Assembly (NCBI GenBank): GCA_002269645.1
Contig: NIVC01001017.1
Coordinates: 1 to 28,446 of the forward strand
Direction: 5' to 3'
Source of the DNA: Macrostomum lignano
Lineage: Eukaryota
DNA length: 28,446 nucleotides
The notes under the pieces were generated by a model. The model was not told the origin of the DNA and did not search any database. It saw only the letters and a program-made list of their open reading frames with translations. This document shows positions 872 to 23,951 of this stretch, piece by piece. Position 1 is the stretch's first letter, and every line of letters begins with the position of its first letter. Both the position numbers and the translations under genes were made by a program.

Positions 872-1150
872 GGGAGGTGCAATGGGAGATGAAGGGGAGT
901 CAAACGGGAGATGAAGGGGAGTCAAACGGGAGATGAAGGGAGTCAAACGGGAGATGAAGGAAGTCAAACGGGAGATAAAGGGGAATGCAATGGGAGATGA
1001 AGGGAGTGCAATGGGAGATGAAGGGAGTGCAATGGGAGATGAAGGGAGTGCAATGAGAGATGAAAGGGAGTGCAATGGGAGATGAAGGAGTGCAATGAGA
1101 GATGAAGGGGAGTGCAATGAGAGATGAAGGCGAGTCAAACGCATGGGAGG
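872..1150. repeat. Purine-rich 21-22-bp minisatellite (GGGAGATGAAGGGAGTGCAAT / GGGAGATGAAGGGGAGTCAAAC)
   Basis: About 13 tandem units in two variant blocks; explains the spurious ORF 860..1162. Confidence 0.95.
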
Positions 1151-1574: not shown

Positions 1575-2521
1575 CCTACCGCTGAGCTACTCTGACCCCC
1601 CCCCCCCTACCGCTGAGCTACTCTGCCTTCTAGCGCTGAGCTACTCTGCCCTTCTCTAGCGCTGAGCTACTCTGCCCTCTAGCGCTGAGCTACTCTGCCT
1701 TCTAGCGCTGAGCTACTCTGCTTCTAGCGCTGAGCTACTCTGCCCTCTAGCGCTGAGCTACTCTGCCCTCTAGCACTGAGCTACTCTGCCTTCTAGCGCT
1801 GAGCTACTCTGCCTTCTAGTGCTGAGCTACTCTGCCCTCTAGCGCTGAGCTACTCTGCCCTCTAGCGCTGAGCTACTCTGCCCTCCTCTAGCGCTGAGCT
1901 ACTCTGCCCTCCTCTAGCGCTGAGCTACTCTGCCTTCTAGCGCTGAGCTACTCTGCCTTCTAGCGCTGAGCTACTCTGCCTTCTAGCGCTGAGCTACTCT
2001 GCATTCTAGCGCTGAGCTACTCTGCATTCTAGCGCTGAGCTACTCTGCCTTCTAGCGCTGAGCTACTCTGCCTTCTAGCGCTGAGCTACTCTGCCTTCTA
2101 GCGCTGAGCTACTCTGCCTTCTAGCGCTGAGCTACTCTGCCTTCTAGCGCTGAGCTACTCTGCCTTCTAGCGCTGAGCTACTCTGCATTCTAGCGCTGAG
2201 CTACTCTGCCTTCTAGCGCTGAGCTACTCTGCCTTCTAGTGCTGAGCTACTCTGTCTTCTAGCGCTGAGCTACTCTGCCCCCTCCCCCTCCCTACCGCTG
2301 AGCTACTCTGACCCCCCCCTACCGCTGAGCTACTCTGCCCCCCCTCCTACCGCTGAGCTACTCTGCCCCCTCCTACCGCTGAGCTACTCTTCCCCCCTCT
2401 ACCGCTGAGCTATTCTTCCCTCCTATCGCTGAGCTACTCTGCCCTGTACTGCTGAGCTGCTTTGCCCCCTACTGCTGGGCTACTCTGTCCCATACCAGTG
2501 AGCTACTCTGCCCCTGAGCTA
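1575..2521. repeat. ~23-bp minisatellite, core GCTGAGCTACTCTGCC with TTCTAGC or C-rich linkers, about 40 units, in OSBP intron 2
   Basis: Direct reading of units; homogeneous centre, C-tract variants at both ends. Confidence 0.97.
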
Positions 2522-2570
2522 CTTTACGATAACTCAACAGCTGACAAGTACATTCTCCTCGCCAACGTAC

Positions 2571-2776
2571 CAGCATCGCGAATGGCTGGCGCTTTCGACT
2601 TGGCCAATTCAAGCGCAGTCACCCAGCGCTGCCTGTCAACTTCGGACGGCGCCTTCAAATGGAACACTTGGGTGCCGCTGTTCTTGATGATGAATGTGCA
2701 CGAATCGTATGGAAGAATCTGGGCGCTGGCTAAGTTGATGGTGCCGCGACAAGTGTGCGACATCTCGGCGTGATTT
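2571..2776 (-). CDS. OSBP: Oxysterol-binding protein, coding exon 2 (C-terminal half of PH domain)
   Basis: Translation NHAEMSHTCRGTINLASAQILPYDSCTFIIKNSGTQVFHLKAPSEVDRQRWVTALELAKSKA closely resembles the OSBP1 PH domain as I recall it; acceptor atacag at 2777, donor GTACGT at 2570; splices in frame (CG|A = Arg) to the exon at 5389-5516. Remaining exons lie outside the window. Confidence 0.95.
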
Positions 2777-3739
2777 CTGTATGAAGGTGACGATGAAAAT
2801 TAAAGTAATATTAGAGATATGAGGTAATATATAGCAATTGAATAAAGTTGAACAGATTAAGTTGCGAAAGCAGAGGTAATTTACTTTAACTTTACATTGC
2901 TTGAGAATGATGTGAGTTGATTGAAATGCATTGCAATTAATTAATCAAACCTCATTTTGATGATTTATTTTCTTTTTAATAGTCTCCTATGCTGGTCAAT
3001 TGCTTGTAGAATTTGGCCAGCATTTGTGCCCATGTAGAACAGCACTTGTCTTTGCTAGGCCAAGTCCCTGACACCCAAGGCATTAATAAAGCATAGGAAC
3101 CATGAAGACCAATCCTCCCACCATGATGCAAGCATGTGTGATTCTCTGTTAACATTGAATGGCTTAGGTAGAGGCAGTTATAGTTTAATAGCCATTGCTT
3201 CACTTGCAATGTTAATGTAGTTACTGGTATAAAGCCAAGATAATTTACTAAGACTTTGGCCCCAAGTTGGGCATATATTTAATAGCAAACCTAAGGGCTC
3301 AATACAAAAGAAATATATATCGCATTATACATATACCAACTTTGCACATATATCAGCTCAATGTGCAATTGGAACAAAATAGCCTGCACAGAGAAATGAG
3401 GGTGGCTGGGTACAAAAATAACAAACATTACAAATTTAAACTACATAACTTTTATAATTTTACTTTATATTTTTTATTTTGAAAACATTTTAGATGGCTA
3501 TCATATTATCTTTTGAAATTATTTACAAAAATAAGGCTTATAATTTGGTACATTTCTGTAAAAATTCTAGGCTTCACTTAACAATTAGATAAATTTGGCA
3601 ATTAAGACCATTTTCCGTTTCTTTGGAACAATTTAACATAAAGCCTTGGGGCTATTTTTTATATGCATAAATTAGCATAAAATGAAGAATTCATGCCAAA
3701 TTCTTTCTAGCATATGGCCAATATAATCTAGACTATAGG

Positions 3740-3865
3740 CCATACTCCCAAAGATAATGTTTTGTAGGGAAAATTCTTGTATGTAACAAGGTTGTAGGTA
3801 GTCTAGCACTGCATATACAATGTGTATGAAAGAGTTGACAAAGTTTTTTGGTATGCTTTGTGTAA
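3740..3865. repeat. Dispersed repeat, diverged copy of 7032-7160
   Basis: CCATACTCCCAAAGATAATGTTTTGTAGGGAAAATTCTTGTATGTAACAAGG vs CCTTACTCCCAAAGATGCTGTTTTTAGGGGAAATTCTTGTATGCAACAAGG, and AAGAGTTG(A/G)CAAAGTTTTTTGGT further on. Confidence 0.8.
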
Positions 3866-5388
3866 CAATGTTGTTTTGTTAGTATGCCACCATTGTCAAA
3901 GCAATGTAAAATGCTAAAAAGGGTCTTTTATTCTGCAATACCCCTTGGTCCATTGGTGTATAGGCCTACTTGGTAGATTAAATCCAAAGTCCAAATGTCC
4001 CATATGCAGTGTATAAGGCAAAATTCATATGCATTATGCATACTTAGGATAGTAGCAAGTCAATTTGTGGTAAGTTGATTTACCAAAAGTCAATTCACCA
4101 AAAGCAGGTTGTTTTGCCAAATAAATAAACAGCAAACATAAATGTTTCCAATGTAATCAATGAAAAAACAAAAAAATCAAAGTCCCAACTTAACTAGGTT
4201 TATTTTTTTGCAATGAGTATGCATATCTAGCCTAAATTTTAAAATCACACCTTGAAATTGAAAAGTGGGTGTGGTTTAAGTACAGCCTCATAACCTATTC
4301 CACTAAAGCCTTATTTGCACTGCCTTGAAATAAGAAAAAATAGAAATTATGCTTTAAGCCTTAAAATTTCACCCTGAAAATGAGCATAGGATGCAATTTT
4401 GCACCTTGTTTCTGGCGAAAAAGAAAACCCTGCAACCTTATACACTTTTAAGTCTGAAGATTGCTGTTTAAGCTGAGAAAAATATATATACAGGCCTAAA
4501 CTGGCCCAGTTAGAGATGATGTATTTGAGGTTCTTAAGTAAGCAATACAATGTACATGAATCATGTTAACCAAAATGTACATTTATATTAGAATGTAACT
4601 CACTCACTTAGAACAATGAGTGATATATTACATCAGTTTTTGAATTGGTGAATATCAAATTCCCAATCAGTTCATTTGATCATTTCAATGGGCAACATAT
4701 GTTTAGATGATTGTAAACTGAAGGTGAAATATAAGGTGCTACAACAATCTTATTATCTTTTGAAATAAACAAAGTCAGTTTGCTAACATTTGATTTCGTT
4801 TCATTGGAAACTATAAATTTTATGTCTTACAATTGTTTTTTTGATGATTGTCATTGTTTAAGGTGATTGTCACTGTTTGGGGTGATCTTAAACTAAAGGA
4901 ATGCCCTATGATCTTTATATAATATAATTAAATAAATAGCAAAATTATTTTTATAGTTATTAGATATAGGAAGCAATATGGCTATTTTTATGGTCATATA
5001 AAAGAAAATTCGTTTAAATTAGAATTTAATAGTCAACAATTACCTAAAGTAAACTAGCTTGCCAACAGCATAAGCAATAACAAGAACTATTGGTAAAAGT
5101 TAACATTTAAATTTTTATCAAAATATTTATAAATAATTTATTTCTTTATTTTTTTAATTAAACCAACTTAGCTTATACTATAGTTCATTACTTCATTTAG
5201 ATCTATATAGTAGAACTGTTTTAAGTGTTCACTATAAAAATAACCATCTCGCTATTTACATGGTCACCAAGCATAGAACTGCCTAGGCCTAGCCTATTAT
5301 TAAGCCTTAGCCAAGTAGCCAACCATTGTAATGTAAGCAAAATTTTTTAATTTTAGAGTAAATAAATTAAATCATGCTAAAAACCTAC

Positions 5389-5516
5389 CGATAGTACGAT
5401 AGAAGTCCATTTTGAAGGACAAACCAACGTTTTTGATAGCCTCTAAGATAGTTTGTCCACTTATATAGCCATCCTTTGTACTGAGTTGATTGATCACGAT
5501 TTCCAGGCTCATTCAT
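5389..5516 (-). CDS. OSBP: Oxysterol-binding protein, first coding exon (N-terminal half of PH domain); not in the ORF track
   Basis: [43 protein letters not shown]; KWTNY..GYQ.RWFVL..GLLSYY is the OSBP PH signature; donor GTAGGT at 5388; possible acceptor tatag just upstream at 5525, so a 5' exon may exist. Confidence 0.93.
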
Positions 5517-5524
5517 TGCTATGC

Positions 5525-6202
5525 CTATAGAATTCATTTATTCAAAAAGTCCCAAACTAGAACTTAAGTAATAAAAAATATTGTAGTTTGAATTTGAATT
5601 CAGTCACACAGCCTTAGCCTTTAGGCTTATACCGTTTGCTAATACTGAATTGAAAATGAAAATTTGGAGCAAAGAATGTATTGTAAGCCCTGCTCTGGTA
5701 GTAAAGGAGTCAAAAAACACAATAATGCAAGTGGAACATTTCACATTGAATAAGTGCAACAAAATCTTCAAAAGTATTACTATCTTAGCGAGTAAGTGTT
5801 ATAAAGAAACGTAATGCCGATCACAATCACGTTACTAGCCAACGACCTGCATGTCATGATGTCACTGTTCAAAGAAATGACTGTTCAAAAAAGAGACTGT
5901 GCTCTCTGATGTTAAAAGTTTACGTAAAGTAAAAAACCACTTTAAATTAATTACAGAAATTCTATTGAAAAAAAACTGAAAACATTTTTAAAATGTAATA
6001 ATATATTGATTTTGTTTTTTTCTTATAGGGAATATTTTTAAACCTTGATGACATCAACCGGTGAACAAAAAATTCTTCAGACAGAAAGAAGCAATTACTA
6101 TTTTGTCCGCACGCTGAGGATAGGCCGCACAGTTTTCCAATCGAGCGGTATTTTTTTCACTGTATATTACTCGCTGTTGACTAGGTTAATTTAGGACTAG
6201 CA
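5525..6202. promoter_or_regulatory. Probable bidirectional promoter / 5' UTR region between divergent OSBP and ARF
   Basis: Start codons at 5516 (minus) and 6203 (plus) under 700 bp apart; about 16 CpG in 5790-6260 versus about 7 in 2800-5380 (manual count). No TSS data. Confidence 0.65.
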
Positions 6203-6269
6203 ATGGGTCTTACGTTGGGCTCCTTGTTTAACCGTCTTTTTGGAAAGAAGCACATGCGAATTTTAATGG
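6203..6269 (+). CDS. ARF4: Class II ADP-ribosylation factor (ARF4/5-like), exon 1; not in the ORF track
   Basis: MGLTLGSLFNRLFGKKHMRILM + G|gtaagt; myristoylation Gly2; phase-1 junction matches the acceptor at 15695 (G|TC = Val). Confidence 0.95.
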
Positions 6270-6457
6270 GTAAGTTGTATTGTGATTGATTGTAGGCCTA
6301 TGTACTGAAGAAAATGCCTAATTAGAGACATCGGTAAGAAGTTCTGTTTTTAATTTTTAATAATTGAATTTTCTAATTGAAACAGTTGTTGCCAAAAGGC
6401 AAAATGATCTATTTATTACTAGGCCTAATACTAAAATTGATTATTGTCCTTACTCCC

Positions 6458-7031
6458 CAGGATGGAATTCTTGCTTGGGGGTAGGAAAAATACGTGCGCA
6501 CGTTTTTGGAACAGTGCGCAAGCGCACACGCTAGCTATAAAAATAAGTCATGCAGATCATGGCCCATGCACTAAAAAATGAAATATAGTTTTTAAATTCT
6601 ATGCCAACATGAATTAAAAAGTTTTACTTTAAGTTTAGAGTAGCTTGTACACTATATTTTTTTAAAGAAAATATTCTTTAGTAGTTATAAGAGTTTCACT
6701 AAACTTTAAAGTTACTGTTTTTTCCTAAGAAAATACTTTGTTTTACTTTTGTTTTGAAATTTTCCAGCGTAAAAACAACCTTCCAGGCTATGAAAAGTAG
6801 AACTTAAGTGCACATACACCACCTGGCACATAACCATGTTAAATGTGTGTAAAAGTCAAATCCTGTCTATGATTCTACAGCAAACAGCTTCTTGTGCAAG
6901 TGCATATGATAGAACGCGTACACATCTCCTTTAAAAGCATACAAGTAGGCTCCTTTTCAGTGTGCAAGTGCGCACGAATTTGACAAGCGTACACAAATGC
7001 GTATCAACTTTTGTGTAAAAATTCCATCCTG
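6458..7031. mobile_element. 574-bp MITE, 12-bp perfect TIR CAGGATGGAATT, 10-bp TSD CCTTACTCCC
   Basis: TIRs 6458-6469 and 7020-7031; direct repeat 6448-6457 and 7032-7041; no ORF; paralogous empty site at 3740. Confidence 0.88.
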
Positions 7032-7265
7032 CCTTACTCCCAAAGATGCTGTTTTTAGGGGAAATTCTTGTATGCAACAAGGTCCCAGGGAGCCTAGTAG
7101 GCCTATTACATGCATACTTGCATCTAAGAGTTGGCAAAGTTTTTTTGGTGTGCTTAATGCAGCAGCATTATATATACAGAATACTTATAGGCACGGTGGC
7201 TGTGTCTATAATATTTGAGCTTATAGGCATGGCTATAATCATCAATATAAAATGTGTGTTCTGTA

Positions 7266-8191
7266 ACGTATTGGTTTCCCGATAAACATTCAAACAGACA
7301 TTCAGAAATCGTTCAGTAAATGATTAACAAAATTGTCTATTTATTACGCAAGATACTGTGTATTTATAGAAACTTTTATGCATGTCTCTTCTTTAAAAAG
7401 ACACCTTAGACACACACAAAGACGCTTTACAAGCTGAGATATTCCCTAGCAACTGTTGTTACGACATTTCCCAATGTACCAAATATTGTATGTAGTAGTT
7501 TTTTGAGAAGCCGCTACATTGTCCCACTTTGGTCTTTCTGTATGAAATTTGCATAGCAAAAAGTAAGCCCGTGTTCTTGAATTTCGTGTGCCCGCGTTGC
7601 TCCATGTTGGCGCGTAAAAAATTATGTCAGGGGTGGGGGATTCCCTGTTCTACTGTTAATAATAGAACAGTAATATTATTATATAGTAATAAAAGGAATA
7701 CAGTAATACGATCGTAATAATCTTATTATCATTATTAATAGTAATAATTTCAATAATAGTATTAATAATATTGTAATAATAATACATTCAGTATTTTTAG
7801 AAAATGTCGTGACAACATTTGCTAAGGAATATCTCAGCTTGTGAAGCGTCTTTGTGTATGTCTGAGGTGTCTTTTTAAAGCAGAGACATGCGTAAAACAG
7901 CTGTGCAAATTTCATGCAGAAAGACCAAAGTGGGACGATGTAGCGGCTTCTCAAAAAACTACTACATACAATATTCGGTACATTGGGAAACGTCGTAACA
8001 ACAGTTGCTAGGGAATATCTCAGCTTGTAAAGCATCTTTGTGTGTGTCTAAGGTGTCTTTTTAAAGAAGAGACATGCATAAAAGTTTCTATAAATACACA
8101 GTATCTTGCGTAATAAATAGACAATTTTGTTAATCATTTACTGAATGATTTCTGAATGTCTGTCTGAATGTCTGTCGGGAAACCAATATAT
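7266..8191. mobile_element. Foldback / MULE-like non-autonomous element, ~290-bp inverted arms, 9-bp TSD TGTTCTGTA
   Basis: 7266-7557 is the reverse complement of 7900-8191 with 12 substitutions and no indels; TSD at 7257-7265 and 8192-8200; diverged internal ~186-bp-period subrepeat (7800-7895 vs 7985-8082); AAT-rich centre 7655-7790. Confidence 0.93.
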
Positions 8192-8220
8192 TGTTCTGTA
8201 GGACCTTCTCTCAAGCAAGT

Positions 8221-8280
8221 GGTGGCTTAGTGGATATGTTGATTCCTTATGATTGCGTGTACCTAGGTTCAAATCCCAAG
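8221..8280 (+). mobile_element. tRNA-derived SINE-like head (Pol III A and B boxes)
   Basis: A box TGGCTTAGTGG 8223-8233 and B box GGTTCAAATCC 8266-8276 at tRNA-like spacing; no convincing cloverleaf. Confidence 0.5.
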
Positions 8281-8435
8281 TGGTTGGAGTTTTTTAGACC
8301 TTAATTTGATTTTTTAACAAACAAAAAATTTTCCATCTTGAACTTTTCATGTTTTTTAATTAAAAAAAGTAAATTAAATTATTTTTTAATAAGAATAAAT
8401 ATTATTGAAAATGACACTGAAAATTTTATTTTTCT

Positions 8436-8530
8436 ATTGTGTCTCTAAGTGTGAACCTATTCAATATTAACAACATGGCCACCCATTGTGTCTCTAAGTG
8501 TAAACCCATTCAATATTAACATTATGGCTG
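8436..8530. repeat. 49-bp tandem duplication
   Basis: ATTGTGTCTCTAAGTGT(G/A)AACC(T/C)ATTCAATATTAACA at 8436 and 8485. Confidence 0.9.
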
Positions 8531-8577
8531 CTGTGCAAGTTTAATTGACACGGCAGCCATGTCTCTAATAGTGACTA

Positions 8578-8658
8578 GGTCCATACTTATAGACATGGCA
8601 GCCATGCTTATAATGCGGAAACTTATAGACATGGCGGCCGTGTCTATAAGTATGGACC
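8578..8658. repeat. Hairpin-forming inverted repeat, 22-bp stem with one CpG mismatch
   Basis: GGTCCATACTTATAGACATGGC (8578-8599) vs GCCGTGTCTATAAGTATGGACC (8637-8658). Confidence 0.9.
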
Positions 8659-9137
8659 AGTATAAGTATGTGACAATGTAATTATCACAATGTAATTTTC
8701 CACTATAAATAGTATCACTAAAAAAGCATAAAAATCAACCAAATTATCTGCTAATAAGGGTTTATTATGCAATTTAGAAAAGGTCATTCATTATCACAAT
8801 GTAAAAAGGTCATTTATTGTTGCAACATTGGCATATTTTTAAAAATGGGCATGCAGTACATTTTTTGGAATGCATTTATAATTATTCAATTTTTGTTCAA
8901 TTGTGCATCTAGCATGATCTGGACTATGGCATGTTCATTGCATCATGTGGATTCTTTTAGTTCATTTTCTAAAAATACAACAATACATCCAATACATTGT
9001 TCTGCAAGACTAACATTCTAGAACAATGAGTAAACTTTCAAATACCATTGACTTCATTAGTGCATACACAAAAAACAGTTCTAAGATCTAACTTTTTGCC
9101 TTGCATTTATGGAACTCCATCATGGACTTTTTTAATA

Positions 9138-10446
9138 CATCGTGTGTCAGAAAAGTTCTGGGACTGTGCTTATAAAAAATTTATTAATAAAAATCACTCA
9201 GAACCAAAGCTGGCCCCTTCAAAGTAATCCCCACTGAGACGAACGCACTTGTCCATCCGTCTCTGCCAGGCATCCATGCAGCTCTGAAAGGCTTCTTCAA
9301 AAATGCTCCGCAGTTGCGTCGTCGTGGCCCTTCTGATGGCATCTACATCAGGAAATCGAGTACCTTTGAGGACTCCTTGAGCTTGGGAAATAGGAAAAAA
9401 TCACATGGAGCCAGATCTGGTGAGTATAGAGGCTGGTCCAACACTGTGACATTCCTATCCGCCAGATACTCCCTGACATTAAGAGCATTGTGAGATGGCG
9501 CATTGTCCTGATGGAGGAACCATGACTTGGCCTCCCACAAATCATGTCTCTTGTCTTGCACTGAGCAAAGCAGCCGCTGCAGATCTCCTTGTACATATGC
9601 TGATTGATGGTGTGACCTTTGGGCAGGAACTCATGTGCACAATGCCTTTGACATCAAAGAATGCGATGAGCATAAGCTTGACCTTCGACCTTGATTGTCG
9701 CGCCTTCACTGGTCTTGGTGATCCTGGTCGCTGCCATTCACCACTCTGCCGCTTGGTCTCCGGGCCGTACTCAAAAATCCACAACTCATCACCAGTAATC
9801 ACTCTGTGCCATAAGCTTGGATCAGCTTCAATGTGTTCAAGGATGTCCTGGCACACCTGCAGTTGTCGTTCCTTCTGGTCCTCGCTCAGCAACTTTGGAA
9901 CCATTTTGGCACAAATCTTGTGCATCCCCAGATCCTCAGTCAGAATCTTATGAACATTGTCATGATTCAAGCTCAACTTGTCTGCAATCAAGCGAACAGT
10001 CAGCCAATGGTCGCTACGAAGCAACATCGCCACTTGCTCCACATTTTCTTCCGTCCTGCTCATTGAAAGTCTTCCACTCCTGGCGTTGTCCTTGACCTCC
10101 TCCCGCCCCTCTTTGAATCGCTTGTGCCACTCAAAAACGCGGGAGCGAGACATGGCTTCAGCCCCATACACTTGCTGCAGCAGTTCAAGCGCTTCCGAGG
10201 CTGATTTCCCCAATCAAACAAGGAACTTCAGATTGATTCGTTGCTCGGTACTCATGGCACGACGGTTGTTAGAGAACTTGCCAAACGTTAATCCTAGCAC
10301 AAGTTCCTAGGAAAATGTTGATTAGCTGATATTGCAGGACAAAGCACCTGTTATATGCTGCTAAAGCCTACCACAAACTGCTAATTCATAGTGCACCCAG
10401 AAGCCAAGCTGTAGGCTCAGTCCTGGAACTTTTCTGACACACCTCA
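9138..10446 (-). mobile_element. Full-length mariner (Tc1/mariner, DD34D), 1309 bp, TA TSD
   Basis: TIRs ..GTGTGTCAGAAAAGTTC(TG/CA)GGACTG at both ends, TA at 9136-9137 and 10447-10448; transposase motifs; canonical ~1.3 kb length. Confidence 0.96.
9198..10255 (-). pseudogene. Mariner transposase, inactivated (irritans-subfamily-like by recalled motifs)
   Basis: MSTEQRINLKFLV*LGKS..., AKMVPKLLS, ITGDE, HQDNAPSH, YSPDLAPCDF (34 residues between D2 and D3), GDYFEG; TGA at 10214-10216; single-base frameshifts near 9634, 9581 and 9373. Confidence 0.93.
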
Positions 10447-11270
10447 TAAGTAAACAGTTAAACAAAACAAAGAAAATTTTATCTACTACATCTTAAATAT
10501 TTATAAAACAAATTTTAAACATACAGAAAAATACTTCTTTTATTACAAAACAAACAACTCACCTACATTAATGAGAGTATTAATTCTGTTTGATTGATTT
10601 TCTATTTGGTTGTGATTATAAATTCAATTAGAGTAAAAATGATTTATGAGCAACATTGCACACTTTATGCTACATGCCAACTCCATGTAGCAGCATACAA
10701 TTTGCTGTTTGCACAAAGCACATGGCTATATGTTGGTGAAAATGGATCTTGGCCAAGCTATGCGTAATGCAATATTTATAGGGCCATCCACATAGGAATT
10801 TTCACCAAAAAAGGAAATCTACAAGACTATGGGCCTTTCCTACAGATACTATAATAACTAGATAGGCCACTTAACATATGCTAGCATTCTAATTTTAGTT
10901 CATTAGAAATATAAATAATTTTTTGATTTTTGCCATAAAATATATAATCTTGGTAAATAAAAATATTGTGATGTTATGCAAACAAATTAACTTTTTAAAA
11001 AGGATAAGTATGATATTTTTACATTGCCATTGTGAGTAAAATGCATATCACAAACAAAAGTAGATATACAAAAATGAGCAATTCAAAGATACATTTTATT
11101 ATAAAATTAGATGATAAAAGTCATATGAAGTACAAAATAGACACTGGCTAAAAAAATAATAAACAGTATCAAAATTTGTCTTACAAGGCAAATTTTGTCA
11201 ACAAAATTTGGGACCAAATTCCAAAATAGCAGCAAACCATTAATGTAAAAAGTATAGTTAATGCAAATAT

Positions 11271-12032
11271 CTAGTTAAATTTCTTGACTTTTTGCAATGC
11301 AGAGTACTTAGAATGGACATCTAGGGGCATTCTACATTGGCACAATGGTGTAAATGCAGACATAAAAATGCTTTAAATAAATGGTCTTGCACTTGTTGGA
11401 AATGCATTTTACAAGCTAGGAAGGAAATTGCAGATCAAAGAAAATTTGTTTTACTTGGAATACAACTTTTGGCTACACAATGAAGGCTGCTGATTGAGCA
11501 CTGAAGATGGCTTCCATTTTGTTAAAGCTTTGCAATGTAGTTGGCAAAGGCAGTTTTAGACCACTGACTGTATAAAAGCATCTTATGCTGTAGATGCATT
11601 CTAGTAGGATTTGTAATAGTCAAAACCAACTTGCAGCTCTGTCATTCTAGAATGCCACTCTTATTGAGCATAAAGCCACCTATGTACTTAGTTGTTTCTT
11701 CTAGAACTGAATCATCAGCTGGTTGCTCTTGTATTAAGACTTTGGAAATAGTCGCATTGCCCAATCATCAGCCTTTAAATCACTTGTTGCAGATGTGCTA
11801 GTTGTGCTGAGTTCAATGGCTGCATAGTCTGCTATGATTGCATCTACGCAGCTATTGTCTTTGCAGTTTCTGACTCTGGATCTGGATCTGGATCTGGCTG
11901 GGACAGATTGCAGCTACAGATAGATAGATGCAGTTATCTATTGGCAGCTACAGATTGCAGTGCCCCAACAAACATTGAAATCTCTGGCTTTTTGTTAAAG
12001 CCATTGTGGCCACGGATGATGCAGAATAGATT
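11271..12032 (-). pseudogene. P-element/THAP9-like transposase remnant, last exon
   Basis: NLFCIIRGHNGFNKKP continues QDHV(E) across the intron; YIGGFMLNK...*QSC, SGLKLP, MEAIF, FYVCIY, ends QKVKKFN*; acceptor ttgcag at 12033. Confidence 0.82.
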
Positions 12033-12246
12033 CTGCAATTCAAGATTTTTGCATGTATTTTACATTAAATAAAATTTACAACTAAGATATTTATATTCAT
12101 ACTCAATGAATATTTTTATAACTATAATAATTTACTATAATAATATGGTATATTTAAAGTACATATTATAGCTATAAATAAAATTTCTTTGTATTTGTGA
12201 TTATACAATTTTAAAATGTTTGATTTAAAAAATTGAGGTAACTCAC

Positions 12247-12901
12247 CTTAACATGATCCTGTGTTAGTCTTTGCATGCACAATAACTTGTTGTGCTCATC
12301 TTGAATCAACACTATGCTAGCTGCCATATTGCAGAAGTTGACAGAATCAATGCCTCTTTGAATTTAATAGAGACCTTTATTGATTTCCTGCTACTAGGAA
12401 GGAACTGCCAGCTTCCAATGAAGGCTTTGATGCTACGCAACTTGACAATCTTTTCTTCAAGCAAATTTCATATGATTGGCTGCTTAAATTCTTTGTCAAA
12501 AATGTGCATAAAATTCAACAAGTTGAATGCATCATTAACTCTCTGCACAAAATCTGCTATCTGCAAGGCATCAATATTCAATAGGCAGTTCTGATGCACT
12601 AGTGTCTTGATTTTGCTAGCAACCAAGTGACTAAAGATCAGAGTGGCTAGGTAGACTTCATTTTCTGGCCCAATTGGAGGTTGAAGTGTGCATCACTCAG
12701 CTAACTCGCCAGTCTAATGATCAGCTGCTGTCCCTTTTGTAGAAGTTGACCAAAGTCTTGCATCTTGCTTGCTTGTCTCTATCAAAATGATGTTGTTCTT
12801 AATGAGGGTATTTGCACATTCTTTAGGCATGTGGGATTGATGATCACAAATATGGGTTTTTGTGTCACAGGATAGTTTAGAAATGGAGCTGTAGGAGTTA
12901 C
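12247..12901 (-). pseudogene. P-element/THAP9-like transposase remnant, exon with GTP-binding insertion region
   Basis: FVIINPTCLKNV (D..HL.KN.RN motif), KMK/V.LATLIFSH.VAS, ADFVQRVNDAFNLLN, QRLTQDHVK (T.RL.QD.LE motif); acceptor tttag at 12902, donor GTGAGT at 12246. Confidence 0.88.
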
Positions 12902-13090
12902 CTAAACAAATAAAAAGTTCAAGGCCTTAAATAAACAAAATGTTTACTAGCACAAACTGATTTTTTTGAAGACTTGAAGTTTCAAATCAAAACAATAGCA
13001 ATAGAATTTTAGTACAAAATAAATTATTTTATATTTCAAACTTTGTTTTAATTTTTATAAGGCATTATATCATTTAAGTACTCAACTCAC

Positions 13091-13595
13091 CAGTTTGGGA
13101 TAGGCCTTTTGCAGAGCAAAGGCACTGTCTATTGCAGACTTGAATTGAAGCTGACCAAAGGTTCTATGTACTTGATAGTATGCAATTAGTTGCTTCCAGT
13201 TGCTCCAGATTCCACTAAGAATAGCAACAACTGCTTTGTTTATGGATCTTTGAAGATTTTGCTCAAGGTCATAGCCTACAACTTAGTCACCATGGTGGTT
13301 GTAGCAGATGCTAGCTAATAAACTCATGCGATCCAAGCAAAGGGTTGCTAGTTGCTATGGCTTGGGGTCATTAGCAAGCTTTTCATGCAACAGTTTGATT
13401 GTTTTCTGGCAGACTCCAGGGGATGAAAAGAACTGGCAGGTTGACTGCTTCAACAATATCTTAGATAGAAGTAGAAACTTCACTTGTTGCTCAACATTTG
13501 GTAGGCAGCTAGGCTCTTGTAGTGTAGCTAGATGGATTTGGAATTTTTTTGACCATATATTCCACGGGAATCAAGAAACTGCTGCTTATACTACT
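13091..13595 (-). pseudogene. P-element/THAP9-like transposase remnant, exon with first catalytic Asp
   Basis: LHYKS.AAY.ML, TLCLD(R)MSL...YNHHGD*VVGYD, SGIWSNWKQLIAYY; acceptor ttcag at 13596, donor GTGAGT at 13090; stops and frameshifts. Confidence 0.82.
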
Positions 13596-15642
13596 CTGAA
13601 TTTTATCTTAATTTTTTTTTCATTTTTAATGAAGAAATCTATATGATATCTTATATTAATAAAGTAAAGCAGGCACTTTAAGTCGAGAAAACAAACAGAG
13701 CTTGTCTTGTATTTGCTAAATCTAGTCAGTTTATAGTATCTGTGGTGGGCCAATAAGCTAGATGATTGAGATCTTATCTTAATTCTTTCCTCACTTCCTA
13801 TTTGCTTATATAGCGACCCTTATACCCCCCCACTCTAATTTTGCATGCCTATATAGATATTACCCTTTACAGTTAACCCCCACCCTTTTTATTTCCTCAC
13901 CAAGTGCTCTCTTGTTGATTGCTATATATTCATACATTTTAGTGGCATTAGCCAATGTACATTTAGCTGAACCAATTAAGTTGTTTGCATGTCTGCATGC
14001 TCCACTTGTAAACTATACCAGCCATATAAACTGTTGTTATACATAATATAGCTAATGAATTCTTTATTTGCTATTGAACTAAAAGTAGAAAAATAAAAAA
14101 CTAAGGACATTTGCCTTAAGTGGCCTATCTAGCTATTATAGTTTCTGTGGCCTTTCCTAAATATAAAGAACTAGTAGTATAGCTAGGGAGGGATATAGGG
14201 ATATATCCCCCCCCATTTTGATGATTTATGAGAAACAAAAATAAGGTTTTTTGAAGAAAAAAAGCAAAATAAGTGGCTTAGACTTAGCAAAATTGCCAAA
14301 AATGGTCTATTTCATTTATAAATTACTAAGAGAATGTTTTAAATGATATTTCCGCAAATCCCTAGTTCCTAAAATGCTCTAATCAGGATAGATGTCTGCC
14401 AGTTTTATTCTGATTTTAACAAAGTAAAGTAAAGTGTAACAGAAAAAACTTTTGTGATGTCTTAATTTATAGTCCAATTTGTTTTAAAGTGTAAGGCTGC
14501 TAGGCATTATAATATATGTTTTAGGGAAACCTAGTACATGTTTTAAAGAGATTGATTGTTGCAGTGCCTCAACTTGCAACCTTCTTTCTTAGGATTTATT
14601 GGCGCATACTTAGTGGATTTAATCCAACCTTCCTATGTGTAGTATGCAAAGCAAAAAAAAACTGGTGCATATGCATTGTGCATACTTGGGACTATGGATT
14701 ATTGTAAAAAATGGACCAAATTCCTAATATTAATATAGATTGGAATTTTTATGAAAATAACTAATATTTATATTCTCTGATAGCCAAAACTTTTCATTGC
14801 ATCTAGCTAATTTAGTAAGATAAAGATTTAGTATATTTAGATTAAAGCCAAAGGTTGTTATGATGCAATCTTAATTAAAACGTTAGAACTTAACTAGCCA
14901 AAGGAATATTATGCATAGTTGATCATTGCTAATAAAAGGTAAATAGGATGATAAATTTTAGAGATGTTCTAGAATTTCAATTTCAATTTTCTAAATTTTG
15001 GGATTTTTAAAAGCAAATTTTGATTTAAAAAATTAAAAAGTAAAAATTTTGAAAGTTTCTAGTTTTTGCATGCATTTTTTATCTAATTTCAATATTATTG
15101 GTACTTTGTTATTGTCCTGTAAATCAGTGATATTATTATGATTTTTTAAAGTATTTGAATTTGTTAAAACTGTTATATACATGTAGCATGTTTGTGGAAC
15201 TATAAATTTTCTTAAATTTTGTAAAACTTAAATTTAAAAAGCTATAAAAGTGTTTGCTAATATATTTATATTTTGCGCATACTATTGTTCGAAAGATACA
15301 TATACATATATGGTTTACAAGATCACATTTATCGTTAGTTGAAGCATCTTTCTAGCTATAGATATAGCTATTCCATGCTGAGTTTGTGTTAGCATGTGTC
15401 ATGACAAAGTTACTTTTGGAATTCTAAATTTAGACCTTAGAAGATGTCAATTTGGCTATTTATTTTTTTCTAAGCTTGATGTCATTTAGTTTAAGATCTG
15501 TATTTGCTATTTTGATTCATATTTCATTTGAAGCACCAATAATATGAATCAAATTTCAAATTTAAACAATCTGTAAGTGTTGAGTCTGTAGACTTGCAAC
15601 TTCTGCGAGAATAGCATAGAGATGTTGGTATTTTATTTCTAA

Positions 15643-17075
<1,433 letters not shown>

Positions 17076-17120
17076 GAACCGCTATTTTTTAACTATAAAC
17101 TATGCTGTAACAAATTGCAG

Positions 17121-17907: not shown

Positions 17908-18517
17908 ATCTATAAATCATTATTCTTTGTCCCCAAAGCGAGTGAGAGCGCTTATTGTTAATTTGTTGAGTTATCATTTAATTTTTGCACCTAATCTATA
18001 TAATTAGTTAAGCGGGTTTTTAGAATTGTTGCTTATTCAGCCCCGATTTTGTTGTCTGTACTTTTCGCTGTTGCTTTTTTCCTCTGTCTCATAGTTTTCT
18101 CTTTTTGTTACAATTGGTGATTGTCCCGGGGCAATAGGCTTATTTATTACTCTGTATGTACCTCTTTCCATTAGTTAGTACGTTATTATTGCTTCGGTAT
18201 AAAACTTGCATAATGTCTTTATTATATGGTAGAGACTTCAGTGAGTTGCGTCATTTTGGCATTCTTCCAAAATCGATATATGCTATTGTTCATTGTATAA
18301 TTAGAAAAGATTCGGGCAGTCTCAGACTTAGTAGATGTCCTTGAACTGTTTAGTCGTCGTGGACTTATGCAATTTTTTATTGTCCTGTTGCTTTATCTAT
18401 ATCTGCTATGCTGCTGCTGCTCTTTTCTCTGTCTATCTGGTTATTTGCTCCCCCACAATGAACGGAATGGGTTGAATCAAATTTTTATTGCCAGTCTGGT
18501 CTGCTTCCCGAGCCTTG

Positions 18518-18555
18518 CTCTCCCTCTCTCTTTCTCTCTATCTCTCTCTCTGTCC
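18518..18555. repeat. Imperfect (CT)n microsatellite
   Basis: CTCTCCCTCTCTCTTTCTCTCTATCTCTCTCTCTGTCC. Confidence 0.7.
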
Positions 18556-19762
18556 TTTGCTCTAACTATTGTTGAAGTAATCAATAAATGCCAATTTAAT
18601 AAAGACTTGCACAACAAACTGGGATTTTGCTCGTGGAATTGTCGTCCGAATGTGTCGAAATAAAAAAAACTATAAGAAAAGTAATGGACTTTATGCGCGA
18701 GTTTAGTTGTTCTTCTAATTTTCCGGAAGGGTCAGCTATGCAGCCTCGTGGAAGCGGCGGTATTGCTGAAATTTGGGGTTCGCAAAGTCAAGCATGAGTT
18801 TTTTGATTCCGCTGTCTAGCGCCCCGAGTAGTTCAGTTCACAGATCGATTCTGTAGGAAGAGCGGGAAATCCGCTTAGCGCTCTAGACTGACTGGAGAAC
18901 AGAACTGCTGTGGGATCGATATTTTTTCTTTCAAAAAAATCCCTGTACTCACTGCATGCACCAATTGGTAGATTGCAACTGCTGCATTGACGTGCTGCAC
19001 TCAAAGTGACGACGAATGGGGCCAATCATTTCTAGCTTATGGCTATGCACACTCCGCTAGCTTGTCACTACTATAGCTGTATGAGAGATGTCCGTCCGGT
19101 TTTATCGAAGTTTAACCAGAGTGCTTTGACTTGACGTGTACGGCGGCCCTGACTTTCTAATCGTCAGGTGTGTACACTCTGTGCTTTGGTGTTTGACCCT
19201 CTTGGGTGTGAATCAAGGTCCCAAATGAATGTCCTCAAAGCGCACGGAATCGAACTAGGGGCTCATGCATAACAGTCAAGTGCATAAGTTGCAAAGTATT
19301 CATTACTTGCTTGCAGGGGCGCTAAAAATGACACTTTAGTCTGCAGATGTGGCAGCGCTGTACGCATACGGAGTCGCGAGTTTACTGTATACGTCGGATG
19401 AGAGTAGGCCGACGCGTGTTGTTATTCATCAGAACTTACTGAAGAGTACATGTAAGTAGCAAGAAACGAATGTTAAAGGAAGTTTTTTGCTTGTGCAAAA
19501 AAGCTAGTTATACGGGCTATATAGAATTCTTTAAAGATTTGTCTGAGCCCATCACAGTTAACAATTGTTAATAGGTAAGATAAGAACTCAGACAGCGGTC
19601 CAGGGCTATCGCAAGTTCGAATCTCACTTTCGGGCACACAGTATAGAAGCTAATGTGAACTACAAGTTTTTTAAGACTGCAACGGTCAGCAAGCAGTACG
19701 CTTTCATGCTTCGCAAACTGTTTTGATTGTTTGCGTTTTTAATTAAATTTTGCATGTGCCAA

Positions 19763-19768
19763 TTTATT
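19763..19768 (-). terminator. Candidate polyadenylation signal of the death-domain gene
   Basis: AATAAA on the minus strand about 170 nt downstream of the stop at 19935. Confidence 0.4.
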
Positions 19769-19934
19769 CAAACAGTTTGTTTCGCCTGTAGCAATGAGAG
19801 TCTGTTTCTATATCGAAAACTTATTAAGAAAATAAAAAGAAGAGCAGTTTATTTGCAAGGCCATAAAACTAGCAGAGAAACGAGAAGTCGTGCGTGCTAC
19901 TTTATCGGTGACTTCGACTGCTAATTGCATGTTA

Positions 19935-20365
19935 TTAATTTACAACGTCGTGCTGCTGCGAATCGGCCGGCTCCAGATGTCGGTAGAACGCCATCAGCTG
20001 CTTGTCAAGATGTTCCGGCAGCGGATCATTGTGCTTGTCGTCCTTCGCCGACCGGGGCTCGCCGTCCGGTGGCCGCAGGAAGGCGTCGATATCGTCGACA
20101 ACGTCCCCGCGCCGCATGCGCTCGAGAGCGGACCGCAGCTCCAGCAGCTTGGCCCGCCGGTGATAGCGCCGCCAGCGTTGGATAGCCCGCCAGGCGCACT
20201 CGAACAGCGAATCGGCAACAAAACTGCGCTGCAACTCGGCGATGTCCCGGTCGATGGTCTCCCGACTGCGCTGCGGCACAAACGGCAGTGCCCGGTAGAG
20301 CCGCTTCCAGTCGCGCTCAATTTTGTGCGCCACAAGCAAACAGACCTGATCGAATGCGCTGCCGG
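19935..20365 (-). CDS. Last exon of coiled-coil/death-domain protein (death domain)
   Basis: AFDQVCLLVAHKIERDWKRLYRALP...AWRAIQRWRRYHRRAKLLELRSALERMRRGDVVDDI fits the death-fold pattern (W..L.R.L, L..W, L..AL....R.D); acceptor caattttag at 20366; in frame with upstream exon (G|CC). Confidence 0.85.
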
Positions 20366-20783
20366 CTAAAATTGAGTAAATGAAAATATTTATTAGCTGA
20401 TTTTTTAGCTTAACTGTCAACAGCTGTTCAAAATTACCATTTATTTCAGCCGTCTCCGAACGACGCATTCTTTTGTCGCCTGAAAAAAGATTATTTGGAA
20501 GCATTCGTAAAGAGCAAAGTGTAAGTTGCTAAAGCTCGAGTGGAAGTGCTCGGTTTGTCAAATGTAAGAAGCGAATTGATGGCAACTCTTCCCCACCGGG
20601 CATCAACCAAAACGAAACAAAACGGACATTAACAATAGTTGAACTTTGAATACTCCAAGGATACCCTTAAAAAGATACATTTTCAGTCAGACCAGTTGAC
20701 TAGAGACGCCCAGACATCCCCATCCAGGTTCCTCACTTAAGCTCCCAGGGGACATGCGCTCGTGGAATTTTGATTCCAATCGC

Positions 20784-20868
20784 TTTTGGTCTGAAGCTTT
20801 ACTTCGAGCTTTATTCTGGTGCTTAAGTTGACATCCCCAACCGACTAACCACAAGCAAACAGACCTGA
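20784..20868. repeat. Intronic chimeric duplication: 67-bp exact copy of the splice-donor region fused to a 20-bp copy of the downstream exon
   Basis: 20784-20850 identical to 21314-21380; 20849-20868 identical to 20330-20349. Confidence 0.95.
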
Positions 20869-21379
20869 GCGATATGAATTACGCTATAAACGCTCAATCG
20901 CCGGCGGCGGGCCCCCGACCGCTTTGTTCCGTGACCGACCATCACGTGTCATTGTTTGAAATGTTACGACATGCTAAACAGCCTCTGATAACACTATAGC
21001 GTATGTTCTCGCCTCGGCTCCTTGACAACAAAGTATTAGGAAATCTTCTTACTGTTCGTATCAATGTTCACGTCACTCCCGTTACAGAGGGACATGACGT
21101 AGCCCCAGTCAAAGCTTGTCACACTAGTGTATAGTCTATGGCTATATCTCCCACTCTACAGTTCCCTCGGTCGCATACCATCGTTAATATCCACCGTTCT
21201 GTCTTTTAATCTTATACTAATATGCTTGCTCATCTTTGATCTTAAGCACTGAAATACATTAGTATGTATTAGTATGTATATACATTAGCTAATCCGTTGT
21301 TCCGGTCACCACATTTTGGTCTGAAGCTTTACTTCGAGCTTTATTCTGGTGCTTAAGTTGACATCCCCAACCGACTAAC

Positions 21380-22931: not shown

Positions 22932-23951
22932 GGCGCCGATGACTGGTGGCCAAGCGGGAAAACGGAAGCAGAAAATTTTTCAGCGTCTTTTCGGATCCGA
23001 GGTTTAGGATATTATAGTTGTTTTTGAAAAAAGAGCCATACTTATCTTACTTTCCAATAGTGCCTTGTTACAAGAGATAGCTATACGCCTTTTTTATCCT
23101 GAGTCCTCAGCCCAAATAAGCATAGCTATGGAAAATTCTATCGTCTCTGCCAATCCTAAGCCAGCGCTAAGACCGTCCATTTGTGAGCAGTGGAGTGGCG
23201 CACACTTGGATACCATGCATAAATAATTCAAAATGGCTCTGGCTCATCGGAGTTTTTCTGTACATTGCGGATGATCTCACTGCACTGAGCGGACTACTAC
23301 CGGTATATTTGACAATGGACCTATGGCTGCATGGATACTCAAGCGAGAAGTCTCAAGTTGCCTAGGCTACGCGGCCTCGCAACAACTGCAGAATAGTGAT
23401 TTGCGTCTAATTCCGTATTTCTCACGCGTATTGAGGAAGAGTCAAAGCTGATGAACTGATGAATATTGTTTTTTATGCATGCAAGTGTTGCTGCTGTTGA
23501 AAAGGGCTGTGGTCCGGTGGTCCGGACGGGCGTAACAAACGCGGGGGTCCAGTGGGAACCGCTTTCTGGGCCAGTGGTTTGGTTGGACGGTACAGGGTCT
23601 GCCGGGATCCGGATAGGGCTGCTGAGGTGCCGACAAGATCAGGCTGGAGCACGCCAAGAGTTGCCGGACAAACGGGGGTTAATCTCTGCTAACCCAGACA
23701 GGACTTGTTTATCACCGCTGAGAGGTTCAGATAAAGTTAGCCTTAGACAGGCGGGTTCCGGGTTTGTGAAATCCAGGAGTGCAGAAAAAGCATGATATTG
23801 GGTATATCGTTGTGGGAACCGCCGATTCTTTTGCATCTTCTTCTCTAGACCAAAGTTTAGAGCCTATAGAGCGTCGGATATGATGGTTGAAATTAAGAAT
23901 AGAGACGATGAAGCGAGGTTTTTGCCTGCATATTGGATGGACAGCGACAAC

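What the first reader, a model, noticed from the sequence alone, without database searches (positions are those of the whole stretch)
7266..8191. Foldback arms record a pure C>T/G>A mutation spectrum, including non-CpG (CAG) sites: methylation- or RIP-like repeat decay in an animal
Seen: aligning the two ~290-bp arms by hand gives 12 mismatches, no indels, no transversions. Seven are at CpG (including CG>TA at the terminus), four at the C or G of CAG (for example GACAGAC>GATAAAC, CACAG>CATAG) and one at GCA>GTA. Both arms carry derived T/A alleles. Established: 5mC deamination gives CpG transitions; CHG methylation is a plant trait and CpA>TpA RIP is fungal; animal 5mC is mostly CpG. Inference: repeats here may be hit by CpG methylation plus a CpA/CWG-directed process. 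Supporting hints: excess TAG stops in the P-element and apparent CG>TA double hits. Caveat: n=12, and CAG/CTG remain common in the P-element.
Basis: partly seen in the sequence, partly recalled or inferred. Interest (0 to 1): 0.85.

Follow-up and report, generated by a model that had tools for sequence, protein, structure and literature searches.

The report
Foldback transposon arms showing CpG decay
A 926-bp hairpin-shaped, non-coding transposon copy in what is probably a free-living flatworm genome has two arms differing by 12 transitions, mostly ordinary decay of methylated CpG, and the proposed second plant- or fungus-like mutation process is not supported.

Summary
Element 7266-8191 has two 292-bp inverted arms flanked by a 9-bp target-site duplication (TGTTCTGTA). 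The arms differ at 12 sites, all transitions, with no indels. Seven are at CpG, four at CAG/CTG and one at GCA.

The CpG part is significant: 0.175 versus 0.009 changes per site per arm, about 19-fold, p = 3e-6. It fits the CpG-depleted neighbourhood, so 5mC deamination is the best explanation.

The non-CpG part rests on five sites. Three lie within 11 bp inside a subterminal 12-bp tandem repeat where 8 of 11 C/G are CAG/CTG anyway, so they are probably not independent. Counted as one event, the enrichment is not significant (p about 0.07-0.08).

Controls in the same window show no CAG/CTG or CpA targeting:
- Tandem arrays have fewer transitions at CWG (1.2%) than at other non-CpG sites (3.1%).
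- (GACA)n carries more transversions than transitions.
- CAG/CTG is not depleted (o/e 1.06).
- The old P-like element has excess CpA+TpG, the opposite of RIP, and no TAG-specific stop excess.

The nearest named relative of a neighbouring gene is Macrostomum lignano, a flatworm reported to retain DNMT1 and DNMT3. No other copies of the family could be retrieved, so mutation direction stays largely unresolved.

The parts
7257..7265 (.). Left target-site duplication, TGTTCTGTA
   Evidence: Identical 9-mer directly abuts both element ends.
7266..7557 (+). Left arm (292 bp) of the foldback element
   Evidence: Ungapped reverse-complement match to 7900-8191. The repeat finder reports 289 nt at 97%; there are 12 transition mismatches over 292 nt.
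7281..7315 (+). Subterminal tandem subrepeats in the left arm: GATAAACATTCA / AACAGACATTCA / GAAATCGTTCA. They hold mismatches 7283, 7285, 7293 and 7311.
   Evidence: Read directly from the alignment. The right-arm counterpart has two perfect GACAGACATTCA units.
7558..7779 (.). Spacer: a CpG-rich unique segment (about 7558-7650) followed by an AT-rich TAATAA-like stretch
   Evidence: Sequence. The loop has CpG o/e 1.34 and 11 CpG. No coding capacity beyond spurious ORFs.
7780..7897 (-). Third, partial and older copy of the inner arm, in the same orientation as the right arm
   Evidence: 88-90% identical to 7983-8083 and to 7374-7474 in reverse complement. Serves as an outgroup for 7423, 7466 and 7481.
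7900..8191 (-). Right arm (292 bp)
8142..8176 (-). Subterminal tandem subrepeats in the right arm: GACAGACATTCA x2 plus GAAATCATTCA
8192..8200 (.). Right target-site duplication, TGTTCTGTA

Best explanation
This is one copy of a non-autonomous, foldback-type (long-TIR) DNA transposon that inserted with a 9-bp target-site duplication. It lies in a CpG-depleted, repeat-rich stretch of an animal genome, most likely a free-living flatworm related to Macrostomum. Since insertion, or since the arms were last homogenised, the arms have accumulated point substitutions. About 60% are CpG>TpG/CpA transitions from spontaneous deamination of germline 5-methylcytosine. The other five are ordinary non-CpG transitions. 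Three of those fall in a subterminal 12-bp tandem repeat that consists mostly of CAG. They may be one local event (unit conversion or slippage) or an inherited difference between the two ends. No separate CWG- or CpA-directed process is needed. Shown: the anatomy, the spectrum, the CpG excess, the clustering and the negative controls. Inferred: methylation as the cause, the direction of most changes, the taxon, and the transposon superfamily.
For: Anatomy: 292-bp arms, 9-bp TSD, non-coding loop, and a DNA hairpin of -351 kcal/mol, z=-50. CpG excess: 7 changes at 20 CpG positions vs 5 at 272 others, 0.175 vs 0.0092 per site per arm, about 19-fold, p=2.6e-6. Six of 10 inferred ancestral CpG dinucleotides are hit. 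Outgroup: at 7423 the ancestor is C with T derived on the right arm; at 7481 the ancestor is G with A derived on the left arm. Regional signature: CpG o/e is 0.12-0.5 over 2-14 kb with TpG/CpA at 1.2-1.5, against about 1.0-1.1 over the gene at 18-24 kb. The old P-like copy has CpG o/e 0.10, while the foldback is still at 0.96 and therefore young. The small palindromic repeat family flanking the element differs almost only by CG/TG/CA (family D2). Non-CpG part: 3 of 5 hits lie within 11 bp (p about 0.025-0.03), in a repeat where 8 of 11 C/G are CWG. With the cluster counted once, P(>=2 of 3 in CWG) = 0.07-0.08. Controls: in tandem arrays, transitions per site are CWG 9/758, CHH 29/928, CG 6/219; (GACA)n has 8 transitions vs 33 transversions at 581 CWG site-copies. 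The inner copy vs the arm has 8 non-CpG transitions, only 2 of them in CWG. CAG/CTG o/e is 1.06. TAG/CAG is 1.53 against TAT/CAT 1.50 in the P-like copy. (CpA+TpG)/(ApC+GpT) is 1.68 in the P-like copy. Taxon: a two-exon gene at 19935-22931(-) matches the M. lignano protein PAA81666.1 at 44% and 58% identity. M. lignano is reported to keep DNMT1 and DNMT3 with low 5mC (PMC11292947, PMC9246332).
Against: If the five non-CpG changes are treated as independent, 4 of 5 in CWG is nominally significant (p=0.003-0.009). All 12 differences are transitions, whereas older repeat pairs in the window have roughly 1:1 to 2:1 ts:tv. Tandem arrays show little CpG hypermutability (6/219), so CpG decay is not uniform across repeats here. 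At 7466 the outgroup carries A, so that CpG difference could be a gain rather than a loss. No other family copies were available to polarise the changes. Methylation itself was not measured.
Confidence: 0.75

Rival explanations
1. A real second process targets non-CpG cytosines at CAG/CTG (or CpA) in repeats. It could be DNMT3-type non-CpG methylation followed by deamination, or a repeat-directed deaminase or RIP-like system.
For: Four of 5 non-CpG transitions are in CWG, which makes up 16-23% of eligible sites (p=0.003-0.009 if independent). There are no transversions among the 12 differences. CAG-preferring non-CpG methylation exists in some animal cell types (PMC3950701). The nearest named relative retains DNMT3 (PMC9246332).
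Against: Three of the four hits form one 11-bp cluster in a CAG-rich tandem repeat, and the context was chosen post hoc. CpA shows no preference (p=0.66). Window arrays have a lower CWG transition rate than CHH. CAG/CTG is not depleted. The old P-like copy has excess CpA+TpG and no TAG-specific excess. The clustered changes mix C>T and G>A on one strand, so they are not deaminase-like strand-coordinated changes.
Confidence: 0.07
2. Some mismatches are not post-insertion mutations. The two ends of the family were never identical (asymmetric outer termini and heterogeneous subterminal subrepeats), or one arm's subrepeats were homogenised by unit conversion or slippage.
For: The right arm has two perfect GACAGACATTCA units while the left has GATAAACATTCA and AACAGACATTCA. 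One conversion plus one substitution explains 7283, 7285 and 7293 with 2 events instead of 3. The CG/TA difference sits at nucleotides 2-3 of the termini. In the Tm1 Mutator/Foldback family the outer 7-bp motifs of the two TIRs are asymmetric, and TIRs of one element average 93% identity (PMC3169594).
Against: All of these differences are still transitions, which conversion alone does not predict. No second copy was available to show that the differences are shared by the family.
Confidence: 0.15
3. The mismatches are consensus or basecalling errors, for example methylation-sensitive long-read errors that differ by strand and therefore between inverted arms.
For: Nothing direct. Such an artefact would produce transitions at modified motifs.
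Against: There is not a single indel between the arms across several A/T homopolymer runs, which argues for an accurate consensus. The CpG decay pattern matches the regional CpG depletion, which cannot be a read artefact.
Confidence: 0.03

Closest known systems
Foldback / Mutator-like foldback transposons (Drosophila FB; Tm1 of root-knot nematodes, PMC3169594)
   Same: Long composite inverted arms with short subterminal tandem subrepeats. A 9-bp target-site duplication. Small non-coding MITE-like copies. Arms of one element a few percent diverged.
   Different: No sequence similarity was tested or found. No linked transposase was identified. The arms are mostly unique sequence with only about 3 subrepeat units. 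Copy number is unknown.
CpG decay of methylated repeats by 5mC deamination (as in vertebrate and some invertebrate transposons)
   Same: A transition-only excess at CpG affecting both strands and both arms. The surrounding DNA is CpG-depleted with TpG/CpA excess. Older repeats are almost CpG-free.
   Different: Methylation was not measured here. The host appears to be a flatworm, a group in which genome-wide methylation patterns were described as unknown for free-living species (PMC9246332). Tandem arrays in the same window show little CpG decay.
Fungal repeat-induced point mutation (RIP)
   Same: C>T/G>A transitions in duplicated DNA, with both copies affected.
   Different: No CpA preference. 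CpA+TpG is not depleted and is in excess in the oldest repeat. The mutation density is far lower than typical RIP. Long near-identical tandem arrays are untouched. A RID/Masc1 homologue could not be tested.
Non-CpG (CAG-preferring) methylation by DNMT3 in mammalian pluripotent cells and oocytes (PMC3950701)
   Same: The CAG context of 4 of the 5 non-CpG differences.
   Different: There is no evidence that this leaves a heritable mutational footprint here. The window-wide controls are negative.

Membership tests
Foldback-type / MITE-like class II transposon | Long terminal inverted repeats able to fold back | tested here: met
   292-bp arms at 96% identity. Hairpin dG -351 kcal/mol, z -50.
Foldback-type / MITE-like class II transposon | Target-site duplication of fixed length directly flanking the arms (9 bp for FB/Mutator-like) | tested here: met
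   TGTTCTGTA at 7257-7265 and 8192-8200. A 9-bp TSD is reported for Tm1/FB in PMC3169594.
Foldback-type / MITE-like class II transposon | Arms built from tandem subrepeats | tested here: inconclusive
   Only about 3 subterminal 11-12-bp units, plus one partial arm duplication at 7780-7897.
Foldback-type / MITE-like class II transposon | Multiple dispersed copies, and a related autonomous element with a transposase | not testable with these tools
   No further copy in the window, in metagenome or prokaryote collections or as called ORFs. The host species is absent from the protein collections.
5mC-driven CpG decay | Transition rate at CpG far above non-CpG | tested here: met
   0.175 vs 0.0092 per site per arm, p=2.6e-6.
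5mC-driven CpG decay | Regional CpG depletion with TpG/CpA excess | tested here: met
   CpG o/e 0.12-0.5 over 2-14 kb with TG/CA at 1.2-1.5. P-like copy at 0.10.
5mC-driven CpG decay | DNMT1/DNMT3 present and CpG methylation measured in the germline | not testable with these tools
   Literature on the nearest named relative only: M. lignano keeps DNMT1 and DNMT3 (PMC11292947, PMC9246332).
RIP (fungal repeat-induced point mutation) | C>T preferentially at CpA | tested here: not met
   CpA 3/41 vs CpT+CpC 2/46, p=0.66.
RIP (fungal repeat-induced point mutation) | Depletion of CpA+TpG and gain of TpA in repeats (RIP indices) | tested here: not met
   (CpA+TpG)/(ApC+GpT) is 1.02-1.13 in the arms, similar to the left flank (1.18), and 1.68 in the old P-like copy.
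RIP (fungal repeat-induced point mutation) | RID/Masc1-type methyltransferase | not testable with these tools
   The proteome of the species is not available.
Plant-type CHG (CWG) methylation decay | Elevated C>T at CWG relative to other CH contexts across repeats | tested here: not met
   In the arms, 4/20 vs 1/68, but clustered. In arrays, 9/758 vs 29/928. Inner copy vs arm, 2 of 8.
Plant-type CHG (CWG) methylation decay | CAG/CTG under-representation | tested here: not met
   o/e 1.06 in non-satellite DNA.
AID/APOBEC-type editing cluster | Strand-coordinated C>T (or G>A) runs in a TC or WRC context | tested here: not met
   The cluster at 7283/7285/7293 mixes a pyrimidine and two purine changes on one strand, and its contexts are ACA and CAG.

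The most novel reading that the evidence does not exclude
In a free-living flatworm that retains DNMT1 and DNMT3, hairpin-forming repeats attract non-CpG (CAG/CTG) cytosine methylation or deamination in the germline. This would leave a heritable CWG>TWG/CWA footprint in addition to CpG decay.
Probability: 0.06. Interest if true: 0.7.

Novelty: new member of a known kind. Interest (0 to 1): 0.15.

Why it matters
As it stands the finding is ordinary: a young foldback transposon copy decaying at methylated CpGs. Two modest points are worth keeping. First, the window gives sequence-level evidence for strong, regionally mosaic CpG hypermutability in a probable macrostomid-like flatworm. The decay covers transposon-rich DNA: the P-like remnant has CpG o/e 0.10, while a neighbouring gene is at 1.1. 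Genome-wide methylation patterns in free-living flatworms were described as unknown in the 2022 review PMC9246332. Second, arm-versus-arm comparison of foldback elements is a cheap internal clock for mutation spectra. It only becomes informative when many elements are pooled and polarised. A real CWG-directed process in an animal would be notable, but the present data do not call for one.

Tried and rejected
1. Looking for other copies of the family. Exact look-up of two window ORFs found nothing. A protein search with the 118-aa ORF spanning arm and loop found nothing. Two metagenome scans and one prokaryote-genome scan with conserved arm motifs gave zero matches. A window self-BLAST found only the three arm copies.
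2. Sampling the same genome through mariner copies. The best hits are only 69-72% identical, so the species is not in the collection.
3. The word-indexed search with the 518-aa ORF found nothing. Only the full HMMER scan did.
4. Selection for an RNA hairpin, with G.U wobble tolerated. Rejected: mismatches are 6 G.U and 6 A.C on either strand.
5. APOBEC-like cluster. Rejected because the changes are not strand-coordinated.
6. A link between the foldback and the P-like element in the window. The termini are unrelated: ACGTATTGG versus ACAGAWACTAT.
7. Rfam and tRNA scans of the window found nothing.
8. Direct Pfam scanning of raw frames failed because of stop codons. It was redone with stops masked.
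9. The Wasik et al. 2015 M. lignano genome paper is not held.

Full report
**What is there.** Positions 7266-8191 form a 926-bp element with two 292-bp inverted arms (7266-7557 and 7900-8191). The arms align without a single gap. A perfect 9-bp direct repeat, TGTTCTGTA, abuts both ends (7257-7265 and 8192-8200).

- The 342-bp loop holds a CpG-rich unique segment, an AT-rich TAATAA-like stretch, and a third, older partial copy of the inner arm (7780-7897). That copy is 88-90% identical to the arms.
- Only short spurious ORFs are present.
- As single-stranded DNA the element folds into a near-perfect hairpin (-351 kcal/mol, z = -50).
- Each arm begins with about 3 tandem 11-12-bp subrepeats. The right arm has GACAGACATTCA twice, then GAAATCATTCA. 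The left arm has GATAAACATTCA, AACAGACATTCA, GAAATCGTTCA.
- Long composite arms, subterminal subrepeats, a 9-bp duplication and a non-coding body are the anatomy of Foldback / Mutator-like foldback elements such as Tm1 (PMC3169594). Superfamily membership cannot be shown, because no transposase or second copy is available.

**The observation.** There are 12 arm-to-arm mismatches, all transitions. Seven are at CpG (7267, 7268, 7311, 7423, 7466, 7481, 7520), four at the C or G of CAG/CTG (7283, 7285, 7293, 7554), and one at GCA (7541).

**Is it more than chance?**

- The CpG excess clearly is. There are 7 changes at 20 CpG positions against 5 at 272 other positions. That is 0.175 versus 0.0092 per site per arm, about 19-fold, with p = 2.6e-6.
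- The inner copy polarises two of the CpG changes as CpG losses: at 7423 T is derived on the right arm, and at 7481 A is derived on the left arm. At 7466 the inner copy carries A, which means either a CpG gain on the right arm or parallel decay.
- For the non-CpG sites, five of five transitions is not remarkable on its own (p = 0.03-0.24, depending on the transition fraction).
- Four of five in CWG is nominally significant if the sites are independent: Fisher p = 0.009, and p = 0.003-0.004 under a direction-free null.
- Three of those four lie within 11 bp (7283, 7285, 7293). The probability of such clustering is about 0.025-0.03.
- The cluster sits inside the subterminal tandem repeat, where 8 of 11 C/G positions are CAG/CTG by construction. 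Any local event there would therefore score as 'CAG'.
- One unit conversion or slippage that homogenised the right arm, plus one substitution, explains the cluster in two events rather than three.
- CpA, the RIP context, is not preferred (3/41 vs 2/46, p = 0.66).

**Independent controls within the window.**

| Control | Result |
|---|---|
| Eight tandem arrays, copy vs consensus, transitions per site-copy | CWG 9/758 (1.2%), other CH 29/928 (3.1%), CpG 6/219; transversions at least as common as transitions |
| (GACA)n array, where every C and G is in CWG | 8 transitions vs 33 transversions at 581 site-copies |
| Inner copy vs left arm | 9 transitions, 4 transversions; of 8 non-CpG transitions only 2 are in CWG, the rest in CAC, CAA, CCT and similar |
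| Two other dispersed pairs | 11:9 and 3:8 ts:tv |
| CAG/CTG frequency in non-satellite DNA | o/e 1.06 (TAG 1.02) |
| P-like element 10842-14148, ratios | TAG/CAG 1.53, TAT/CAT 1.50, TAC/CAC 1.36 |
| P-like element, stops over three frames | TAA 86, TAG 67, TGA 59, so no TAG excess |
| P-like element, (CpA+TpG)/(ApC+GpT) | 1.68, an excess as CpG decay predicts and the opposite of RIP |

The P-like element was identified from the TNP-like RNase H domain (E = 1e-12) and the GTP-binding insertion domain (E = 1e-4). None of these controls shows a CWG- or CpA-directed process.

**Methylation signature and host.**

- CpG o/e is mosaic: 0.12-0.5 across 2-14 kb, with TpG/CpA at 1.2-1.5, and about 1.0-1.1 across 18-24 kb.
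- The foldback still has CpG o/e 0.96, between flanks at 0.48-0.61. The old P-like copy is at 0.10. The foldback is thus a young insertion in a region that loses CpGs quickly.
- A small palindromic repeat family on both sides of it differs almost only by CG/TG/CA (family D2).
- The only sizeable gene in the window has two exons on the minus strand (22931-21375 and 20504-19935). Its best relative among 1.8 billion representatives is the Macrostomum lignano protein PAA81666.1, at 44% identity over about 500 aa and 58% over the death domain. All other hits are at 35% or below.
- The host is therefore probably a free-living flatworm related to M. lignano but distinct from it. The species itself is absent from the searchable collections.
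- M. lignano is reported to retain DNMT1 and DNMT3 with low 5mC, and methylation patterns in free-living flatworms were described as unknown (PMC11292947, PMC9246332). CpG decay here is consistent with that toolkit.

**Mechanism.** The best-supported account is as follows. A non-autonomous foldback-type transposon inserted with a 9-bp duplication. The region is CpG-methylated in the germline. 5mC deamination then produced T:G mismatches that became fixed independently in each arm. A handful of background transitions were added, some in the unstable subterminal repeat.

- The terminal CG/TA difference lies at nucleotides 2-3 of the element. In Tm1 the outer motifs of the two ends are asymmetric in the family itself (PMC3169594), so this 'double hit' may never have been a mutation.
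- Selection for an RNA hairpin is not indicated: mismatches are 6 G.U and 6 A.C.
- Read error is unlikely, given zero indels across homopolymer runs, but it cannot be excluded without reads.

**Comparison with known systems and verdict.**

- The element is a new, unclassified member of the familiar foldback/MITE kind.
- The mutation pattern is the familiar CpG decay.
- RIP, plant-type CHG decay and APOBEC-type editing each fail at least one defining feature tested here.
- CAG-preferring non-CpG methylation does exist in animals (PMC3950701). The novel reading is therefore not impossible, but I put it at about 6%.
- The decisive test is a genome-wide, polarised and opportunity-normalised spectrum together with a germline methylome. 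It needs the species' assembly and could not be run here.

Noticed in passing
window 10842-14148 (minus-strand coding remnant about 12476-13423): A decayed P-element-like (THAP9/TNP-like) transposon. It matches the RNase H N-terminal domain (E=1e-12) and the GTP-binding insertion domain (E=1e-4). Its inverted termini are ACAGAWACTATAATA..., and GGCCTTTCCT is directly repeated on both flanks (8-10 bp TSD). CpG o/e is only 0.10.
   Followed up: partly
window 19935-20504 and 21375-22931, minus strand: A two-exon gene encoding a coiled-coil plus death-domain protein, orthologous to Macrostomum lignano PAA81666.1 (44% and 58% identity). This is the only clue to the host taxon. The word-indexed protein search missed it; only the full HMMER scan found it.
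   Followed up: yes
window 2000-15600 versus 18000-24000: Mosaic CpG depletion. The transposon-rich, AT-rich DNA has CpG o/e 0.12-0.5, while the death-domain gene has about 1.1. For this gene that is the reverse of the usual invertebrate pattern of gene-body methylation. It may mean transposon or intergenic methylation in this flatworm-like genome, or that the 2-15 kb stretch is intronic to a methylated gene.
   Followed up: partly
window 7374-7474 versus 7797-7897: All 8 transitions between the left arm and the inner partial copy in the ungapped core (9 in the gapped alignment) are C/T on the same strand, with no A/G. Post hoc p is about 0.004. The younger arm-to-arm comparison shows no such asymmetry (6:6). 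Unexplained.
   Followed up: partly
window 20784-20851 and 21314-21381: A perfect 68-bp direct repeat spaced 530 bp apart. One copy overlaps the 3' end of the 518-codon exon, the other lies in the intron. It could be a recent local duplication or an assembly artefact.
   Followed up: no
window 7181-7234 and 8544-8658: A short palindromic repeat family (consensus about ATAGACACGGCGGCCGTGTCTAT) on both sides of the foldback. Its copies differ almost exclusively by CG>TG/CA. The foldback may have inserted into or beside another repeat cluster.
   Followed up: partly
window 9343-10213, minus strand: A mariner/Mos1-type transposase remnant (HTH_48, HTH_32 and a partial DDE domain). The best database relatives are only 69-72% identical and come from crustaceans, hagfish and unnamed environmental contigs.
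   Followed up: partly
window 872-1135, 1607-2514, 16149-17078, 23960-24734, 25228-25364, 25909-26231, 27145-28308: About 4.5 kb of the window (roughly 16%) is tandem satellite with unit lengths 21, 23, 31, 14/29, 14, 16 and 4 (GACA) bp. The 14-mer array recurs inverted at 25228-25364. Their CpGs are largely intact, unlike those of dispersed repeats.
   Followed up: partly
window 15646-16131 (+) and 2524-2763 (-): A large Arf-family GTPase exon (Pfam Arf, E=1.6e-63). Also a short ORF that I recall, from memory only, as resembling the C-terminal part of a PH domain of the OSBP/CERT type; this was not tested. The foldback lies between these two divergently oriented coding pieces.
   Followed up: no
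window 8200-8290: A tRNA-like stretch (GTGGCTTAGTGGATA...GGTTCAAATCC) immediately right of the foldback insertion site, possibly a tRNA-derived SINE. ARAGORN and Rfam do not call it.
   Followed up: no
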